Shown: piece by piece, positions 28,042-34,844 of the stretch
How the letters are laid out: every line of letters starts with the position of its first letter
Numbering within the stretch: position 1 is the first letter of the stretch
Assembly (NCBI GenBank): GCA_025558095.1
Contig: JAIVFI010000035.1
Coordinates: forward strand, 248,001 to 312,000
Direction of reading: 5' to 3'
DNA from: Hyaloraphidium curvatum SAG 235-1
Taxonomy: Eukaryota > Fungi > Monoblepharomycota
Length of the DNA stretch: 64,000 nucleotides
The notes under the pieces: model-generated
Told to the model about the DNA's origin: nothing
The model's input: the letters and a program-made list of their open reading frames with translations, nothing else
Databases searched by the model: none
Program-made: the position numbers and the translations under genes

Positions 28042-29563
28042 CTACAGCTTGGTCGCCCGGAGCTCCCCGAAGCGCGCGATCAGGTCCAGCGTAGCCTGGT
28101 TGGACAGGTGCCACGTTTCGGCCACCTCCTTGGCCCGGGGCGAAGCATTCTGTTTCTGGAAATAACGCGCGGCTATAGAAACGTCAGGATGGAGTCTGGC
28201 AAGGCCGGAAAGTGCGCGAGCCCACCGATGCCCTGGGCAATGATCGCCGACCGGAAGTTGGAGAAGGCGATGCAGAACTCGAAGCCGGGGATAGGCCAGG
28301 GGCGGCCGACGGCCTCGCAGTAGATCTTTTGCGACTCCTCCAGAGTGGGGATGCCCGGGGCGGCCTTGAATCCGGGCCGGTAGTAGGGGATGAGCAGGTA
28401 GGCGAGGTCGCTGAGCGGGTGGCCGATCGTCGCGAGCTCCCTGTGAAGCAAGACAAAGTCAGCGATATACCGACGCCATAGCGCCATAGCGCAAGGCGAC
28501 ATACCAGTCCAAGACGGCGATGATCTTGGGCTCGTTGGGGTCAAACATGATGTCTAAAGCGGCGATCAGAGAGGGTCTGGCAAGCGATGCCAAGCGCAAC
28601 ACCGACTGTGGGGGAAAAAGTCGCCGTGGAAGATCGTGGCCTCGTCCGTGACCATGTTGCGCTCGAACCACGCAACCTGCTCGTCCAGACCCACAGCGTC
28701 GCCGACCTCGCGGCCGTCGTCGAGGTTCTTGACGCGGGCCTGCTGCCGGCTCAGGCGGGCCCAGTTCTGGATGTTGCGCTGGTAGTAGCCTGGCCACAGG
28801 CACGTCAGCACGTTTGGCGGGACCACGGCCCGCGCCGCAATCACCAGAGTCCTTGCCGAAGCCCTGAAGGCCGATCTTCTTGTAATCGACCTTGTGGAGC
28901 TTCGCCAGCGTCTGGAGCATCTCGACCCACATGGCGCGCCGCTCCGCGGCGTCCTTTGCCGCCGGCAGGGCGGCCGAGGCGTCGTTGATCCGCCCGGGGC
29001 CGCGGAACTCCATCTTTGCGGGAACTGCTCAGCATCACCGTCGATGACAAGGCCGAGCGGGAACACCCACGACGTAAAAGTCGGTGCCGACGATGGCGGG
29101 GTCCTGGCAGAGCACGTAAGGCTTGGGGGACGGGAAGTCGATCCCGCTGTTGGCCAGAGCGTTCAGGATGCGGTACTCGCGATCGACCTGGAAAACAAGC
29201 GACCGTTAATCACCGCCATTGCCATCGTTCCGGAGGTACTCACCTGGTGGGCGGTGGGAGAGACAATCTTCCCCGGCGGCTTCTTCCTCATCACGTAGCG
29301 TTTGCCGTTGCCGTCGACCATGACGTAGGTGGGGTTCGACTGGCCCAGACCGAACTGCCCGAGGCTTCACGCCGCGGTAACGGGAGAGGAAAGGGTAACG
29401 TGAGCCCGTGACGTGCCGGCCCCCGCGGTGCGGCCCACATCATGGGACCCTTGAAGCCGGGGATGTTCTGGAGGCAGTAGGCCTCGAGCTTGGCCTCGTC
29501 CAGCTTCATGACCACCGGCCCGGCCCCGGGGGTGGCCTTCATGACTTCGGCTGGCGACGGCAT
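28042..29563 (-). CDS. APH-family phosphotransferase (ACAD10/ACAD11/LvaA kinase-like), ends TKL
   Basis: QFGLGQSNPTY, YVMRKKPPG, AHQ/VDREYRIL and spliced HGDFFPHNIMFDPNEPKIIAVLDW/ELATIGHPLSDLAY. The last exon ends GELRATKL*. Confidence 0.92.
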
Positions 29564-29924
29564 GTTGCCTCCGGATTCTCCACTGGATTCCCGTCCGAGG
29601 CGCGACGAAGGCGAAGCTTCCGTCAAATTTCTTTCTTCGAAGTTTTGAGCCCGCGATTAGGCCTCCCAGGAGGTGCCGAAGAGGGGGAAGATGCGATGGT
29701 CGGGTGTTTTGCGGAGCCGAAGTCCGGCCGCACAGACGCCCCTCGCCACCCGCTCAGCTGATTTAACGGGAAGGATTCTGGAGCTCAGACAGACGGAGGA
29801 AGCGCATCGGAGCTAGTTCTCTGCCCTCGTTTCTCCCGCGGACTCGGGAGCTCTCCGCCGTCGACCTTCTCCCACCCTCCCCAATCTCCCGCGGCGGACC
29901 CTCTCCCACCCTTTCCCGCCCGCA

Positions 29925-30913
29925 ATGTCCCCCCATCCCAAGTACAAAGCGGTCCTCTTTGACCTCGGCGGCGTGGTTCTCGGTTCCCCCGTCGGCGGCA
30001 TCTATGTGGGCCCCTCTGCCTCCCTCCCTTTCCCTGCTGGCCTCACCGCGCCCCCGGGAACCAGGAATACGAGCGCAAAGTCGGCCTCCCCGCCGTCATC
30101 AACTTCTGCATCTTCTCCAAGGGCAAGGACGGCGCGTTCCAGAAGCTGGAGCGCGGGGAGCTCAAGGTCGGCGCCAAGTTCTACAAGCTGTTCGAGGAGG
30201 ACATCGCGGACCCGGAGAACGTGGTCAAGTTCAAGGAGTACTTGAAGGCGCGGGGTAGGCCGATCCCGGCCAATCTGCCGGACAGGATCGTGATCAACGG
30301 CGAGGGTGGGTCGCTGTCCGCCGTCCCGCGCGAGACGGGCTGACGTCCGGGCCAGAGATGTGGAAGACGATGATGGGCAACTCGGCCACGGCCAACGAGG
30401 ACATGATCAAGTGCATCCACCGCCTCCGCGCCGCGGGCTTCCGCGTCGGCGCGCTGACCAACAACTTCAAGGACGAGCCCGAGGCCGCCAAGTCGGACCC
30501 GTCGCTGCTCACCCACCGCGAAAAGGCGGAGCCGCGGCACAAGATGTCGGACGGCCTGGCGTTCGACCTGCCGTCGATCTTCGACAAGTTCGTCGAGAGC
30601 AGCGTGATCGGGCACCGCAAGCCGGAGCCCAAGGCGTTCGCCATCGCCTGCGACGAACTGGGCGTGCGGCCCGAGGAGGTGGTGTTTTTGGACGACATCG
30701 GGACCAACTTGAAGGGGGCCAAGCAGGTCGGCATGACCACCATTTGTGGGTCCTTGGAATGCTACCTTTCCCTTTCCTTGCCGGTGACGCTGACGGCCGC
30801 CGCCCCCAGTGGTTGGCCTGAACCAGCAGCGCCAGGCGATCCAGGAGCTCGAGGGCATCCTCGGCGTCCCGCTGCTGGACGACAGCGTGGCCAAGGCCGG
30901 CGGCAAGCTCTAG
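29925..30913 (+). CDS. HAD-like hydrolase (ACAD10 / soluble epoxide hydrolase N-terminal type), ends GKL
   Basis: KAVLFDLGGV, LTNN, ESSVIGHRKPEP and VFLDDIGTNLKGA. 3 introns. The last exon reads WVGLNQQRQAIQELEGILGVPLLDDSVAKAGGKL*. Confidence 0.92.
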
Positions 30914-31032
30914 ACGGGTATCTCTGTAGACCTCCCTCCACTACACCGCGCCCCAGCTCTCTCGCTAAAAGAACGAAACTGCTACTTCCTTTCCTTTTCC
31001 GCCCTCGAAAACCCGCTCCCGTGAACGAGCTC

Positions 31033-33225
31033 TCACAACCCGAGGTCCACGCCCACGACTGGCACCTCCCCCCCGCCCTCGGGGCTCCCCGCCTCCTCCG
31101 TCCCGAGGTAAACCATCTCCCCCCCGTACTCCCTCGCAATGCAGTCGTACTCCACCGTCGGGTCCTCGAGCAGCCACAGGCACCTCCCCACGTCCCCCTG
31201 CCCGATCGCCCACGCCGTCGGGCCCCCGCCCGACCCCACGCTCGCGCCCCGCGCCAGGGCGCGGGCGTTTGCCCGCGGTCCGAAATCCAGCCTCCCCGAG
31301 GCGAACGCCCGCCCGCGCCCGCCGAGCCCGCTCCGCCCGTGGGGGAACCGGTCGGCGTCGGCGTGCAGCGTGCCGGACCACTGCGCGCGCGCGGCGTCGG
31401 GGAGGGAGCGCGTGCTGGCGTCAAAGTCGTCGCCCGCGGCAAAGTTCGGGGGGGAGGCGGCGAGAGCCCAGGCGTCGAACTGGCCCTCCAGGCTGGCCAG
31501 CGACGAGGCCGAGGCGTCGGCGCCCGAGATGTCCCACGGGGCTTGGTCGCCCCGCGCCTGCGCCGCGAGCAGCGCCAGCAGCCCGTCCGCGGGGGCGTTC
31601 CCGCGATCGCGCCGCTTCTTCCTCGCCTTGTCCGACTTTTTCCGCGCGGGGATCTTGAGCGAGCGCGACGACAGCGTCCACTGAGCGTCCTCGTCGCTGC
31701 TCCCGCCCGACCTCCGAGGGCCCTGCCGCGACGCCCCCGCGATGGAAGGGAGCGCGAGGTTGACCACCTCGTCCTCGCTGGCCTCGCGGTAGTACCTGCA
31801 CGGCCTTTCCCCGGCGTACGGGGGCCCGATGATGTCCAGCACGAGGACGCCGTCCGAGACGGCGCGGAAAGAGTGCAGCGTGGCCGAGTGGGGGGACGAC
31901 GAGTCGATCTCCTGGAGCGAGGCGGGGTGGGTGTGGGGGATGTCGGCGTCCAGGGTGATCTGCGCGGGCTGCGCGAAGGTGCTGGCGGTGAGGGGCTGCG
32001 GCGGCGGGTGCGAGAGGAGGCGGTACGAGGTGACGTGGAGCGTGCCGTACACCACTTTGCTGGAGGCCGGGGGGGTATCTCGATCAGCGGGGAGCAGAAT
32101 CGCCACCGGTGAGGAGACCCACCTAAAGACGTTCATCTCCGGGTGGTCGTGTATCGGCATGCTGGCGCCGGCGCGGAGGGCAAACACGCAGATGGTGAAG
32201 AGGTCGCTCTCGAACACGCCGTAGTACTCGACGTTTGCGACCATCTCCAGCGGGCGCAGGTGGCGCGGCTCGACGCGGTGGATCAGGTGTGCCAGCCTGC
32301 GCGACAGGTCTGCGCGCTGCGGCGCCTCGCGGGGCGTGGTGAAGAGGGCGTGTGCGTGCAGCGCGATGTCGTGGACCAGCGACGGCCGCAGCGGGCGGTC
32401 GACGTGGAGCGGGGCCGGCGAGCCGTGCGGCGGCGACGATGTGTCGGGAGGGGGCGAGGGCGGAGCGGGGGGTGGCGGAATCCAAAGTGGTACCGGGAGG
32501 GAGTGCGCCGGGGCCGGCGGGTCCCATTCGGCATGGGGCGGAGAAGGATCGAATGCGCCTCTCGCGGCGTCGAGCGACAGCGCGGCGGCGGCGGGCGGCG
32601 GGGGGCCGGGCGGGCTTCCTGCGGCCACCGCCGATCCCGCCCAGGGGGCCTCGCTGGGGGGCCCGCCGAGCGCCGCGGGGAGGGCGCCGGCGGGCAGCGG
32701 CGAGACGAGCATGGCTGCGGCGGCGGGCGGCGGGCCCCGGAAGGGCGCCGCGGCCGGCGGAGGGGGCCCGAGCAGGCCGCCCAGAGGGGTCGGCGGCGTC
32801 GCGGCCGGTGGCGGCACGGCCTCCCCAAAGTGCCCGCCCCACGTCCGCGCCCCGCTCGCCGCCGCCGGCCGCTGCCACGTGGACCCCGCTGGTGGCGCCA
32901 GCGTGGCAGGCTGAGAACGGCACAGGTTTGGAGTCGCGCGGGGCACGTTGACGCAACGAAAGGCTGTGCGATGAGCAATCGTCCTTGTCCCTGTTGACGG
33001 ATGGGGTGCGAGAAGCCTCGGATGGGACCACGGCAACTTGCTAGAACACGTCAGGGATGCGACGCGCACACTTTCGGGCGGAGTTCCGGTTGGAGCCGGT
33101 GGATGCTGAGGGACCCGAGAGGCGGTCCAGATGCGGGCGGCGGTCGGAGTGGCGGCAACCCCCTTTGTGAGCAGAATAGGCGCTCGGGAGGCCGGTTCGA
33201 CCCGGATGGAGTTCGGTACGGCCAT
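31033..33225 (-). CDS. ADO: PCO/ADO-family thiol dioxygenase (N-terminal cysteine oxidase / cysteamine dioxygenase)
   Basis: Cupin motifs FTICVFAL..MPIHDHPEMNVFSKVVYG (after removing the 63-bp intron 32060-32122), LHSF, LDIIGPPY..RPCRYY and C-terminal LWLLE...YGG. The start is uncertain (32712 or 33225). Confidence 0.92.
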   Translation of the reverse strand: MAVPNSIRVEPASRAPILLTKGVAATPTAARIWTASRVPQHPPAPTGTPPESVRVASLTCSSKLPWSHPRLLAPHPSTGTRTIAHRTAFRCVNVPRATPNLCRSQPATLAPPAGSTWQRPAAASGARTWGGHFGEAVPPPAATPPTPLGGLLGPPPPAAAPFRGPPPAAAAMLVSPLPAGALPAALGGPPSEAPWAGSAVAAGSPPGPPPPAAAALSLDAARGAFDPSPPHAEWDPPAPAHSLPVPLWIPPPPAPPSPPPDTSSPPHGSPAPLHVDRPLRPSLVHDIALHAHALFTTPREAPQRADLSRRLAHLIHRVEPRHLRPLEMVANVEYYGVFESDLFTICVFALRAGASMPIHDHPEMNVFRWVSSPVAILLPADRDTPPASSKVVYGTLHVTSYRLLSHPPPQPLTASTFAQPAQITLDADIPHTHPASLQEIDSSSPHSATLHSFRAVSDGVLVLDIIGPPYAGERPCRYYREASEDEVVNLALPSIAGASRQGPRRSGGSSDEDAQWTLSSRSLKIPARKKSDKARKKRRDRGNAPADGLLALLAAQARGDQAPWDISGADASASSLASLEGQFDAWALAASPPNFAAGDDFDASTRSLPDAARAQWSGTLHADADRFPHGRSGLGGRGRAFASGRLDFGPRANARALARGASVGSGGGPTAWAIGQGDVGRCLWLLEDPTVEYDCIAREYGGEMVYLGTEEAGSPEGGGEVPVVGVDLGL

Positions 33226-33359
33226 GATGGAGGTCGGCCGGGTCCCGAATCCTCGTTGCGGAGCAATCGACAGGTGGTGTTGCGTCGGATCCAGTTTCGG
33301 GTGTTGGGAGGGGCTGGTGGATATTTTGAGTTTCCCTCGGCCACGCTCCAACTTCCGAG

Positions 33360-33366
33360 TGACTAA
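33360..33366. promoter_or_regulatory. TGACTAA, AP-1/Gcn4/Yap-like site between ADO and bZIP starts
   Basis: One mismatch to TGACTCA, in the short divergent intergenic region. A single 7-mer, so it could be chance. Confidence 0.3.
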
Positions 33367-33502
33367 CCGGACGAAGGGTCTCGAACTCCGCCTCCTCCTC
33401 GCCCGAAAAGACACCGCCGGCGCGAGCGTCGGTCGCTCGCGGTCTCGCCCGCGCCCGGACACCGCCGGGGCACCCCCCGTTGGGGCGCAAACCCGTCCCG
33501 AA

Positions 33503-34844
33503 ATGTGCTACCCCCCGAAGAGCGCCGCCGGCGCCGCCGTGCGCCCCGCGCCCGGCCCGCACCGCCCGGCCTCGCTGTTCACCACAAAGGCCGCCATCTC
33601 CGCCGCGCTGGAGAGCAGGGAGGCCGCGCGCCACGCCGCGCCCTACGCCGCCTATGCCGCCGCCCCCCTGCCGGTCTCGCCGCAGAACTCGGTCGAGACC
33701 GACTGGTCGAGCCCCACGCTGAACGACTCGTTCGACATGCCCGCCGCGCTGGACACCGCCGCTCAGGTGGGCACCCCGGGGGGCCCGCCCTCCCAACCCC
33801 CTAACCCCGCCACCGCCACCAGCCCCTGCCGCACGAGTTCCTCGCCGCCTTCCACTCCAGCTTCCCCGGCTTCTACGACGAGAAGAACGTCGCCGCCATC
33901 AACCACGCCCTGTTCGAGAACGTCGGCCTCTTCTCCCCCGAGCTGCTCGACGCCGCCTCGCCCTTCCTGCACCCCCCGGCCTACCCGCCCCTCGTCGACG
34001 CCGAGCCCGCGCAGCCCCCCGCCGCCCCCTTCTTCCCCGCCATCCCCGCCTACCCCGCCGCATCCGCCAAGTACGAGCCCGCGGTCAAGTACGAGTTCGA
34101 CTACCCCGCCACTGCCCCCCCCGCATCCGCCGACCCCGCCACCCTCCCCGCCTACCCCACCCTGACCCTCAAGCGCTCCGCGGACCTCACCTCGGCCGAC
34201 GGCGCCTCGACCCTCTCGGACTCGGAGGAGGCCGACGCCAGCGACGAGGACTACCGCCCCCGCGCGAAAAAGGCGCGGTCCGACGGCGCCTCGGCAAGCG
34301 GAAAGAAGCAGCGCGCGAGGCCGGCGCAGGCCGACGACATCCTGCTCAAGACGGACCCGGAGACGCTGAGCAGGCTGCTGGTGCCGGTGCGCAAGAGGAG
34401 GCAGCCCAAGCCGCTGGACCCCAACCTGCCCATCGAGGTGAGCGTCGGTCGACGGTCGTGCATGGGGGTGCGCGCGGGTGCATCGCCGTGCAGAGCAAAT
34501 GCACCTGCGACATTGCGGATGCGCGGGGGATGCGACCGGGACGCCGGAGATGCGCTGGAGTGCGGTTCGGGCCCGCTGTGCACGGTTATGCGCCACTCCG
34601 CACACCACCCCAAAGTCAGACGCTGACCACCCCCTCGCCACCACAGGTCGTTGAGAAGCGCATCAAAAACACCGAGGCCGCGCGCCGCTCGCGCCTCCGC
34701 AAGACGCTCAAGATGGACCAGCTCGAGCAGCGCGTCACGGAGCTCGAGGCCGAGCGCGGCGAGCTCGTGCGGCGCCTCGAGGAGGCCGAGAGGGAGCGGG
34801 ACGAGTGGAGGCAGCGGTGCGCGCAGGTCGCGTGGAAGCGGTGA
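33503..34844 (+). CDS. GCN4/CpcA-type bZIP transcription factor, probable N-terminus Met-Cys
   Basis: Exons 33503-33766, 33823-34437 and 34647-34844 give 358 aa. Basic region KRIKNTEAARRSRLRK and zipper MDQLEQRVTELEAERGEL. Starts MCYPPKS. Confidence 0.9.

What the first reader, a model, noticed from the sequence alone, without database searches (positions are those of the whole stretch)
31033..34844. Candidate linked oxygen-sensing module: ADO/PCO dioxygenase head-to-head with a Met-Cys-initiating GCN4-type bZIP
Seen: an intact PCO/ADO enzyme (HDH plus third His, PPY, CRYY) is transcribed divergently from a bZIP factor. The only plus-strand ATG in the ~275 nt before the bZIP coding region is 33503 (G at -3), giving MCYPPKS. 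Established: PCO/ADO oxidise N-terminal Cys after Met removal and trigger O2-dependent Arg/N-degron degradation. Known substrates are plant ERF-VII (MCGG), ZPR2 and VRN2, and animal RGS4/5 and IL-32 (MCFPK, close to MCYPPK). Budding yeast lacks the enzyme. Inference: sensor and hypoxia-stabilised transcription factor sit side by side, a fungal-lineage analogue of PCO/ERF-VII that I do not know to be described. Caveats: in-frame upstream ATGs exist at 33131-33227, although they would overlap ADO if it starts at 33225, and head-to-head pairs are common in this window.
Basis: partly seen in the sequence, partly recalled or inferred. Interest (0 to 1): 0.92.

Follow-up and report, generated by a model that had tools for sequence, protein, structure and literature searches.

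The report
Candidate oxygen-sensing switch in chytrid fungi
Water-dwelling chytrid fungi are the only fungi reported to keep the oxygen-sensing enzyme of plants and animals, and they share a gene-switch protein whose first residues look like that enzyme's destruction tag; it is a candidate for the enzyme's unknown fungal target, but it has not been tested at the bench.

Summary
The window is Hyaloraphidium curvatum (Monoblepharidomycota). Both genes are real and spliced. RNA contigs begin at 33363 (bZIP) and 32813 (ADO), so the bZIP starts Met-Cys-Tyr at 33503, and ADO most likely starts at 32712, not 33225. The ADO keeps all catalytic residues. Main result: Met-Cys-(Tyr/Phe) opens this GCN4-type bZIP in 22 sequences from 13 named chytrid and monoblepharid genera, while the rest of the N-terminal half is barely alignable; 0 of 51 control bZIPs, whose named members are non-chytrid, have it. 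Among fungi, this enzyme family is reported only in chytrids, with no substrate described in the papers found. The motif fits human ADO's sequence preference. The head-to-head layout is not conserved: it is a local inversion. ADO lies within about 9 kb in three other monoblepharid loci and not within 10 kb in four Chytridiomycota genomes. UBR1 is present. ATE1 was not found; an L/F-transferase-family gene might replace it. Spizellomyces ADO is inactive on a plant peptide. Verdict: strong, untested candidate for a fungal Cys/N-degron oxygen-regulated transcription factor (about 0.6). The scan's earlier notes did not report this on other DNA.

The parts
32123..32712 (-). ADO/PCO exon 1, from the probable start ATG 32712; Pro/Ala-rich N-terminus, then the first half of the cupin with H188-D-H190 (32151-32143)
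   Evidence: RNA contig starts 32813, first ATG below it is 32712; Pfam PCO_ADO 42.9 bits; PDB alignment
32060..32122 (-). ADO intron, 63 nt, GT..AG, in frame
   Evidence: joint in RNA contig; same position in L004, L005, L140
31033..32059 (-). ADO/PCO exon 2: H259, D272, PPY (Y278), CRYY (C284/Y286), about 200-aa low-complexity insertion, C-terminal WLLEDP segment, stop
   Evidence: Pfam 48.8 bits
31603..31644 (-). Lys/Arg-rich stretch in the ADO insertion, NLS-like (inferred)
   Evidence: sequence; a similar basic stretch is in the L004 orthologue
32814..33362 (.). gap between the two RNA contigs: probable divergent promoter region; holds the unused ATGs 33131-33227 (+) and 33225 (-)
   Evidence: depth 0 in bins 32984-33331; a hole in contigs is not proof
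33360..33366 (+). TGACTAA, AP-1/Yap-type site; the only copy in the 64-kb window; the same 10-mer lies upstream of the L004 orthologue
33503..33526 (+). Met-Cys-Tyr N-terminus (MCYPPKSA): candidate Cys2 N-degron
   Evidence: conservation
33503..33766 (+). bZIP gene exon 1 (88 codons)
33823..34437 (+). bZIP gene exon 2 (205 codons), acidic/Pro-rich region and pre-basic motif
34647..34844 (+). bZIP gene exon 3: GCN4-type basic region and leucine zipper, stop
   Evidence: Pfam bZIP_1 38.1 and bZIP_2 37.6 bits; PDB hits all Gcn4
28069..30913 (.). neighbouring APH-like (-) and HAD (+) genes that form, with ADO, the three-gene block inverted relative to L004 and L005
   Evidence: tblastn map; Pfam labels of the orthologues

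Best explanation
The bZIP belongs to a chytrid-wide group of GCN4-type factors whose Cys2 is an oxygen-dependent N-degron read by the chytrid PCO/ADO. Steps: (1) translation starts at Met-Cys-Tyr (supported by RNA contigs and orthologues); (2) Met aminopeptidase removes Met, exposing Cys (established rule, not tested here); (3) the Fe-dependent ADO oxidises Cys to the sulfinic acid when O2 is present (enzyme residues shown, reaction on this peptide inferred); (4) the oxidised end is aminoacylated, by ATE1 where present and in H. curvatum perhaps by the L/F-transferase-family protein (inferred, weakest step); (5) UBR1 ubiquitylates it (gene shown, action inferred); (6) in hypoxia the factor accumulates and binds AP-1-type sites, possibly including its own promoter (inferred). 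The present head-to-head arrangement comes from a local inversion and is not needed for the mechanism.
For: Met-Cys-(Tyr/Phe) in 22 sequences from 13 named genera in two phyla. 12 were found by matches downstream of the N-terminus, plus 2 cluster members; 7 came from a profile that contained the motif and are biased. In alignment A1, Met1 and Cys2 are invariant and only one other column outside the bZIP is. Four of five gene models checked in DNA or in the protein that lacked MC as annotated had a Met-Cys-aromatic start (hidden exons at L010:2053, L140:9496, L143:1151; a fused model, P0110 residue 307). 0 of 51 Met-starting control bZIPs start MC; named controls are Mortierella, Linnemannia, Radiomyces, Calcarisporiella, Smittium, Dispira. 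In fungi the enzyme is reported only in chytrids (PMC10092093). Residues 3-8 of 17 protein N-termini hold 0 acidic and 24 basic residues of 102; human ADO prefers aromatic or basic residue 3, best with basic residue 5, and NatA avoids these (PMC11199558; PMC12377780). Synonymous codon changes at residues 3-5 point to a protein-level constraint. UBR box plus PRT6_C on one strand of contig C3. No uORF in the 140-nt leader, unlike GCN4/cpc-1 (comparison from own knowledge).
Against: No biochemical or expression data. Spizellomyces punctatus ADO showed no turnover of the RAP2.12 peptide and did not complement the Arabidopsis 4pco mutant; the authors note that some of these enzymes may act on small thiols (bioRxiv 2025.07.24.665511). 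ATE1 was not found by six searches, nor was NTAQ1; the search had no positive control for intron-split genes. The enzyme was shown to co-occur with the MC-bZIP directly in only four genomes (window, L004, L005, L140). The bZIP tree does not resolve whether the monoblepharid and chytridiomycete genes form one clade. G. prolifera P0004 lacks MC. Controls were not checked for hidden exons. Several Met-Cys plant proteins are not regulated by this pathway (PMC13720641).
Confidence: 0.6

Rival explanations
1. Cys2 is conserved for a function that does not need the ADO: non-enzymatic oxidation by NO or peroxide, S-acylation for membrane tethering, or metal binding.
For: It explains the conservation equally well. 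SpADO is inactive on a plant peptide. ATE1 was not found. RGS4 Cys2 is also a palmitoylation site (own knowledge).
Against: It does not by itself explain why the motif is confined to the one fungal group reported to have the enzyme, or why residues 3-8 match ADO's preference. No second conserved Cys or His ligand is seen in A1.
Confidence: 0.2
2. The ADO oxidises Cys2, but the result is not degradation through Arg/UBR1, at least in Hyaloraphidium: oxidation changes activity or location, or the pathway is decaying after loss of ATE1.
For: ATE1 and NTAQ1 not found. The Hyaloraphidium clade has lost the Lys5 kept in most Chytridiomycota (MCYPPK, MCFGP versus MCYVK).
Against: UBR1 with UBR box and PRT6_C is present. 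An intact L/F-transferase-family gene exists. Cys2 and the ADO catalytic residues are still conserved in all four monoblepharid loci.
Confidence: 0.12
3. The chytrid ADO is a metabolic small-thiol (cysteamine) dioxygenase, and the MC-bZIP shares its distribution only through common ancestry.
For: SpADO has a small pocket, an extra loop and no activity on RAP2.12. The contrast is essentially one clade against its outgroups, so it is a single phylogenetic event.
Against: It leaves invariant Met-Cys-aromatic in an otherwise free N-terminus unexplained. D272 and Y278, the equivalents of the residues proposed to bind the peptide N-terminus, are kept. The enzyme carries an NLS-like stretch.
Confidence: 0.08
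4. On the linkage only, independent of the above: the ADO-bZIP neighbourhood is kept by selection as a sensor-target cluster, rather than being residual microsynteny.
For: In Gonapodya sp. JEL0774 the bZIP and ADO are 9 kb apart with different genes between them; ADO is the only gene in that 21-kb locus with a strong match in the 64-kb window.
Against: Orientation and spacing differ in every lineage. In L004 and L005 the whole block is syntenic. No ADO within 10 kb in Polychytrium, Gaertneriomyces, Spizellomyces, Rhizoclosmatium or at G. prolifera P0004. One informative case, with no genome-wide background.
Confidence: 0.25

Closest known systems
Plant PCO / ERF-VII oxygen sensing (Cys-Arg/N-degron; PCO, ATE1/2, PRT6)
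   Same: Same enzyme family with the same catalytic residues; a transcription factor with an invariant Met-Cys start on a variable N-terminus; UBR1/PRT6 ligase present.
   Different: The factor is a GCN4-type bZIP, not an AP2/ERF; the motif is MC[YF], mostly MCYVK, not MCGGAI; ATE1 was not found in this genome; nothing is shown experimentally.
Animal ADO with RGS4/5/16 and IL-32
   Same: Aromatic residue 3, and in Chytridiomycota basic residue 5, match the best ADO substrates (PMC11199558).
   Different: The established mammalian Met-Cys substrates are not nuclear (PMC13720641); animals use PHD/HIF for transcriptional hypoxia control (own knowledge).
Chytrid NCOs, e.g. Spizellomyces punctatus SpADO (PMC10092093; bioRxiv 2025.07.24.665511)
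   Same: The window's enzyme is a member of this reported group; the papers already suggest a role in oxygen sensing.
   Different: The papers found name no native substrate. The Hyaloraphidium enzyme has a roughly 200-aa insertion before its last segment.
Gcn4 / Cpc-1 bZIP factors
   Same: Basic region and zipper hit only Gcn4 in the PDB; AP-1-type sites lie upstream of most orthologues.
   Different: No uORF in the observed leader; Met-Cys start; Gcn4-like hits from non-chytrid fungi lack it.
ATEL1 of Plasmodium (L/F-transferase sequence with Arg-transferase activity; own knowledge, Graciet et al. 2006, paper not held)
   Same: G000:C2 carries an intact single-exon PF03588 gene (38.5 bits) whose nearest Atlas clusters include a mostly apicomplexan one.
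   Different: Equally near clusters are bacterial; its amino-acid specificity is untested; the fold prediction failed (pLDDT 38.6).

Membership tests
PCO/ADO N-terminal cysteine oxidases (PF07847) | Pfam PCO_ADO over the curated cut-off | tested here: met
   42.9 and 48.8 bits per exon, cut-off 27; Atlas top hits PF07847
PCO/ADO N-terminal cysteine oxidases (PF07847) | 3-His iron site (AtPCO4 H98/H100/H164) | tested here: met
   H188, H190, H259 align; kept in L004, L005, L140
PCO/ADO N-terminal cysteine oxidases (PF07847) | substrate-binding Asp and Tyr (AtPCO4 D176/Y182) and the following C-x-Y | tested here: met
   D272, Y278, C284, Y286
PCO/ADO N-terminal cysteine oxidases (PF07847) | O2-dependent dioxygenation of a peptide N-terminal Cys | not testable with these tools
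   the one chytrid enzyme tested was inactive on a plant peptide
GCN4-type bZIP | basic region N-x-x-AA-x-x-SR followed by a leucine zipper | tested here: met
   Pfam bZIP_1/bZIP_2; PDB hits all Gcn4
GCN4-type bZIP | uORF translational control as in GCN4/cpc-1 | tested here: not met
   no ATG between the RNA contig start 33363 and 33503; the true 5' end is not mapped
Cys/Arg N-degron substrate | translation starts Met-Cys | tested here: met
   and orthologues; no ribosome profiling
Cys/Arg N-degron substrate | Cys2 conserved across orthologues | tested here: met
   22 sequences, 13 named genera; exception G. prolifera P0004
Cys/Arg N-degron substrate | residues after Cys aromatic/basic, not acidic (human ADO rule) | tested here: met
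   residue 3 always Tyr or Phe; 0 acidic, 24 basic of 102 positions; rule from PMC11199558, measured on the human enzyme
Cys/Arg N-degron substrate | O2- and Cys2-dependent turnover in cells | not testable with these tools
   needs a reporter assay
Cys/Arg N-degron pathway (canonical) | UBR1/PRT6 N-recognin in the genome | tested here: met
   UBR box G000:C3:493406 and PRT6_C C3:498702-500012, E 5e-92
Cys/Arg N-degron pathway (canonical) | ATE1 arginyl-transferase in the genome | tested here: inconclusive
   six searches blank; no positive control for an intron-split gene; PF03588 gene present instead
conserved head-to-head gene pair | same divergent arrangement in relatives | tested here: not met
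   same strand with two genes between in L004 and L005; ADO 9 kb downstream in L140; not within 10 kb in L006, L007, L009, L141, L142

The most novel reading that the evidence does not exclude
Chytrid fungi recruited a GCN4-type bZIP as their hypoxia regulator under PCO/ADO control, a third-kingdom parallel to plant ERF-VII. In Hyaloraphidium the oxidised Cys is tagged not by ATE1 but by a bacterial-type L/F-transferase-family enzyme, which would be a Cys N-degron oxygen sensor without ATE1.
Probability: 0.15. Interest if true: 0.95.

Novelty: new variant of a known kind. Interest (0 to 1): 0.82.

Why it matters
Chytrids were reported as the only fungi with PCO/ADO, and the authors called for the substrates to be found (PMC10092093). 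The one chytrid enzyme tested did nothing on a plant peptide. This finding supplies a specific, phylum-wide candidate with a short motif that a peptide assay or an existing yeast reporter can test. If true, oxygen control of a transcription factor through an N-terminal Cys would extend to a third kingdom and a third protein class. It would bear on whether the enzyme is ancestral or was acquired from plants, and it would give an entry point into hypoxia signalling in aquatic fungi. The missing ATE1 in Hyaloraphidium raises a second testable question about how the oxidised Cys is read.

Tried and rejected
Upstream in-frame starts (33131-33227) and the ADO start at 33225: rejected as unlikely because they lie outside both RNA contigs and orthologues start at the Met-Cys. 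Head-to-head layout as a conserved module: rejected. A nucleotide-level (start-context) reason for the motif: unlikely, because codons for residues 3-5 vary synonymously; the Cys codon is TGC in most and TGT in Spizellomyces. ATE1 hunts by Pfam ATE_N and ATE_C, two motif patterns, an 18-sequence eukaryotic profile and one protein: all blank; NTAQ1 blank. Tree of bZIP domains: quick method only, 89 columns, base unresolved, so no single origin is claimed. The Fisher test used hand-entered counts on related sequences and is disregarded. The single-sequence fold of the L/F-transferase-like protein failed, so no fold search was run. The supplement listing chytrid NCOs and the ATEL1 paper are not held. 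Ten other GCN4-like bZIPs of this genome show no MC[YF] within 1.5 kb upstream of the domain. DNA for the P0002 and P0007 contigs was unavailable. As the operators asked, spliced models were searched exon by exon by reference and the joined step was left out; the full-length bZIP used was the tool-returned P0001.
Full report
Source and gene structures. The window is from Hyaloraphidium curvatum: exon 2 of the bZIP matches NCBI model DFJ74DRAFT_690724 (P0001, 358 aa) at 100%. RNA contigs of run X1 skip 33767-33822 and 34438-34646 on the plus strand and 32122-32060 on the minus strand; an independent freshwater poly(A) run shows the first joint too. X1 may be the source organism's own transcriptome. 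All introns are GT..AG, and the exon lengths keep the frame. The bZIP contig begins at 33363 and the ADO contig at 32813, with nothing laid at 32984-33331. The first ATG inside the bZIP contig is 33503 (MCYPPKS). The first inside the ADO contig is 32712, giving 538 aa. Contigs cannot fix a 5' end, so this is support only. Spliced models were searched exon by exon by reference; the joined step was left out.

The enzyme. Both ADO exons pass the Pfam PCO_ADO cut-off, and the PDB hits are AtPCO2/4/5 and mammalian ADO. The iron ligands H188, H190 and H259, the proposed substrate-binding D272 and Y278, and the C284-x-Y286 motif are present, also in three relatives. It is the only such locus found in the genome. 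A low-complexity insertion of about 200 aa with a Lys/Arg-rich stretch separates CRYY from the last conserved segment. Fungal members of this family are reported only from chytrids, with substrates left for future work (PMC10092093). Spizellomyces punctatus ADO gave no turnover of the plant RAP2.12 peptide and did not complement the Arabidopsis 4pco mutant (bioRxiv 2025.07.24.665511). That result can mean a different peptide substrate or a small-thiol role.

Cys2 is conserved across chytrids. Two unnamed close relatives found through exon 2 start MCFGPSN (L004:7480) and MCFGPAN (L005:8692). A phmmer search with P0001 gave 102 hits. Seven distant hits, matched only in the bZIP, start MC[YF]: Polychytrium, Spizellomyces sp. 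'palustris', Synchytrium, two Nowakowskiella, Rhizoclosmatium and one unnamed. A profile of these added Cladochytrium, Dinochytrium, Chytridium, Obelidium, Gaertneriomyces and two Phlyctochytrium genes. This second set is biased, because the profile held the motif; one of them (P0110) is a fused model with the motif at residue 307. I then checked the DNA of four named models annotated with other starts. Cladochytrium P0021 has MCYVKST at L010:2053, Gonapodya sp. JEL0774 P0009 has MCYIGGK at L140:9496, in frame through a 79-nt GC-AG intron, and Nowakowskiella P0044 has MCFAKPN at L143:1151. These three exons are inferred from DNA, without RNA. Gonapodya prolifera P0004 has none; its neighbours differ from P0009's, so it may be a paralogue. 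The total is 22 sequences in 13 named genera. In alignment A1, Met1 and Cys2 are invariant while the 200-300 residues before the bZIP hold one other invariant column.

Controls and fit to the enzyme's preference. Of 51 Met-starting rows in the large sister group of the tree, none starts MC. Its named members are Mucoromycota and Zoopagomycota genera (phylum assignment from own knowledge); most rows are unnamed, and they were not checked for hidden exons. Other chytrid GCN4-like paralogues (P0011, P0023, P0028, P0086) and ten other bZIPs of this genome show no MC, so the motif marks one group. Met-Cys starts are rare, about 200 in Arabidopsis (PMC13720641). Residue 3 is always Tyr or Phe, and residues 3-8 of 17 proteins hold 0 acidic and 24 basic residues. 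Human ADO prefers aromatic or basic residue 3, best with basic residue 5, while NatA prefers acidic or polar ones (PMC11199558; PMC12377780). The common chytrid MCYVK fits this; Hyaloraphidium's MCYPPK fits at residue 3 only. The contrast is one clade against outgroups, so it is a single phylogenetic event and I give no p-value. The tree does not resolve whether the monoblepharid and chytridiomycete genes are one clade.

Linkage. In L004 and L005 the order is ADO+ HAD- APH+ bZIP+; in the window it is APH- HAD+ ADO- bZIP+. The tblastn map shows an inversion of the three-gene block, and a third contig also has APH before the bZIP. The head-to-head state is therefore probably derived in H. curvatum. 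L005 shares several more genes with the window, so proximity there is ordinary synteny. Gonapodya sp. JEL0774 is the informative case: ADO starts 9 kb after the bZIP, on the same strand, with unrelated genes between, and no other gene of that locus matches the window. No ADO lies within 10 kb in Polychytrium, Gaertneriomyces, Spizellomyces or Rhizoclosmatium. I put selection on the linkage at about 0.25.

Downstream pathway. UBR1 is present: a UBR box and a PRT6_C domain lie 5 kb apart on one strand of contig C3. ATE1 was not found with Pfam ATE_N or ATE_C, two motif patterns, an 18-sequence eukaryotic profile or a single protein, and NTAQ1 was not found. The tool warns that a blank does not show absence, and I had no intron-rich positive control. 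An intact single-exon L/F-transferase-family gene lies at G000:C2 (L138:1306-2430, minus strand; PF03588 38.5 bits). Its nearest Atlas clusters are two mainly bacterial ones and one mainly apicomplexan. From my own knowledge, the Plasmodium member ATEL1 transfers Arg; I could not retrieve that paper. This gene is a possible stand-in, untested.

Mechanism and verdict. Most likely (0.6) the exposed Cys2 is oxidised by the ADO in air, tagged and degraded through UBR1, so the factor accumulates in low oxygen. Shown: gene structures, catalytic residues, conservation of the N-terminus, UBR1. Inferred: Met removal, oxidation, tagging, degradation and any hypoxia role. Rivals are an enzyme-independent Cys2 function (0.2), oxidation without canonical degradation (0.12) and a purely metabolic enzyme (0.08). 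It works like PCO/ERF-VII by anatomy. The enzyme is a PCO/ADO family member by sequence tests; the bZIP cannot yet be filed as an N-degron substrate. The paper searches on this point found no description of a chytrid Met-Cys bZIP or of a fungal substrate; the library lacks most subscription journals. Rated a new variant of a known kind, interest 0.82, because it makes a stated open question directly testable.

Noticed in passing
window 33360-33366; L004:7222 and about 6918; L005 about 8460; L007, L010, L141, L142, L143 upstream regions: An AP-1/Yap-type site (TGA[CG]TCA or TGACTAA) lies within 700 nt upstream of the MC-bZIP start in 8 of 10 loci (absent in L009 and L140), against a locus background of about 0.03-0.35 per 700 nt. 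Possible autoregulation; post hoc. L004 also has one upstream of ADO.
   Followed up: partly
L138:1306-2430 (-) = G000:C2 near 1063556: Intact single-exon Leu/Phe-transferase-family gene in a genome where ATE1 was not found; candidate ATEL1-type transferase.
   Followed up: partly
window about 31240-31780 (-): About 200-aa low-complexity insertion with a Lys/Arg-rich stretch inside the ADO, between CRYY and the last conserved segment; also in L004 and L005.
   Followed up: partly
L010:2053, L140:9496, L143:1151, P0110 residue 307: Public chytrid gene models often miss the first Met-Cys exon of this bZIP or fuse it to an upstream gene, so proteome-based surveys of Met-Cys proteins will undercount it.
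   Followed up: yes
window 30200-32813: One RNA contig spans the HAD gene (+) and the ADO gene (-), suggesting overlapping 3' ends of the convergent pair; a contig across two genes does not show one transcript.
   Followed up: no
   Followed up: partly
G000:C17:28636-33989 and C21:231343-238931: Small clusters of lineage-specific GCN4-like bZIP paralogues (three on C17, two on C21); none shows an MC start.
   Followed up: partly
L007:4708-8150: Polychytrium aggregatum has a gene with eukaryotic SelB/eEFSec domains next to the bZIP, which hints at selenocysteine machinery in a chytrid; the locus appears twice in that assembly.
   Followed up: no
L010 and L142 leaders: Cladochytrium P0021 and Rhizoclosmatium P0104 have ATGs within 70 nt upstream of the Met-Cys start, unlike the monoblepharid loci; possible uORFs.
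   Followed up: no
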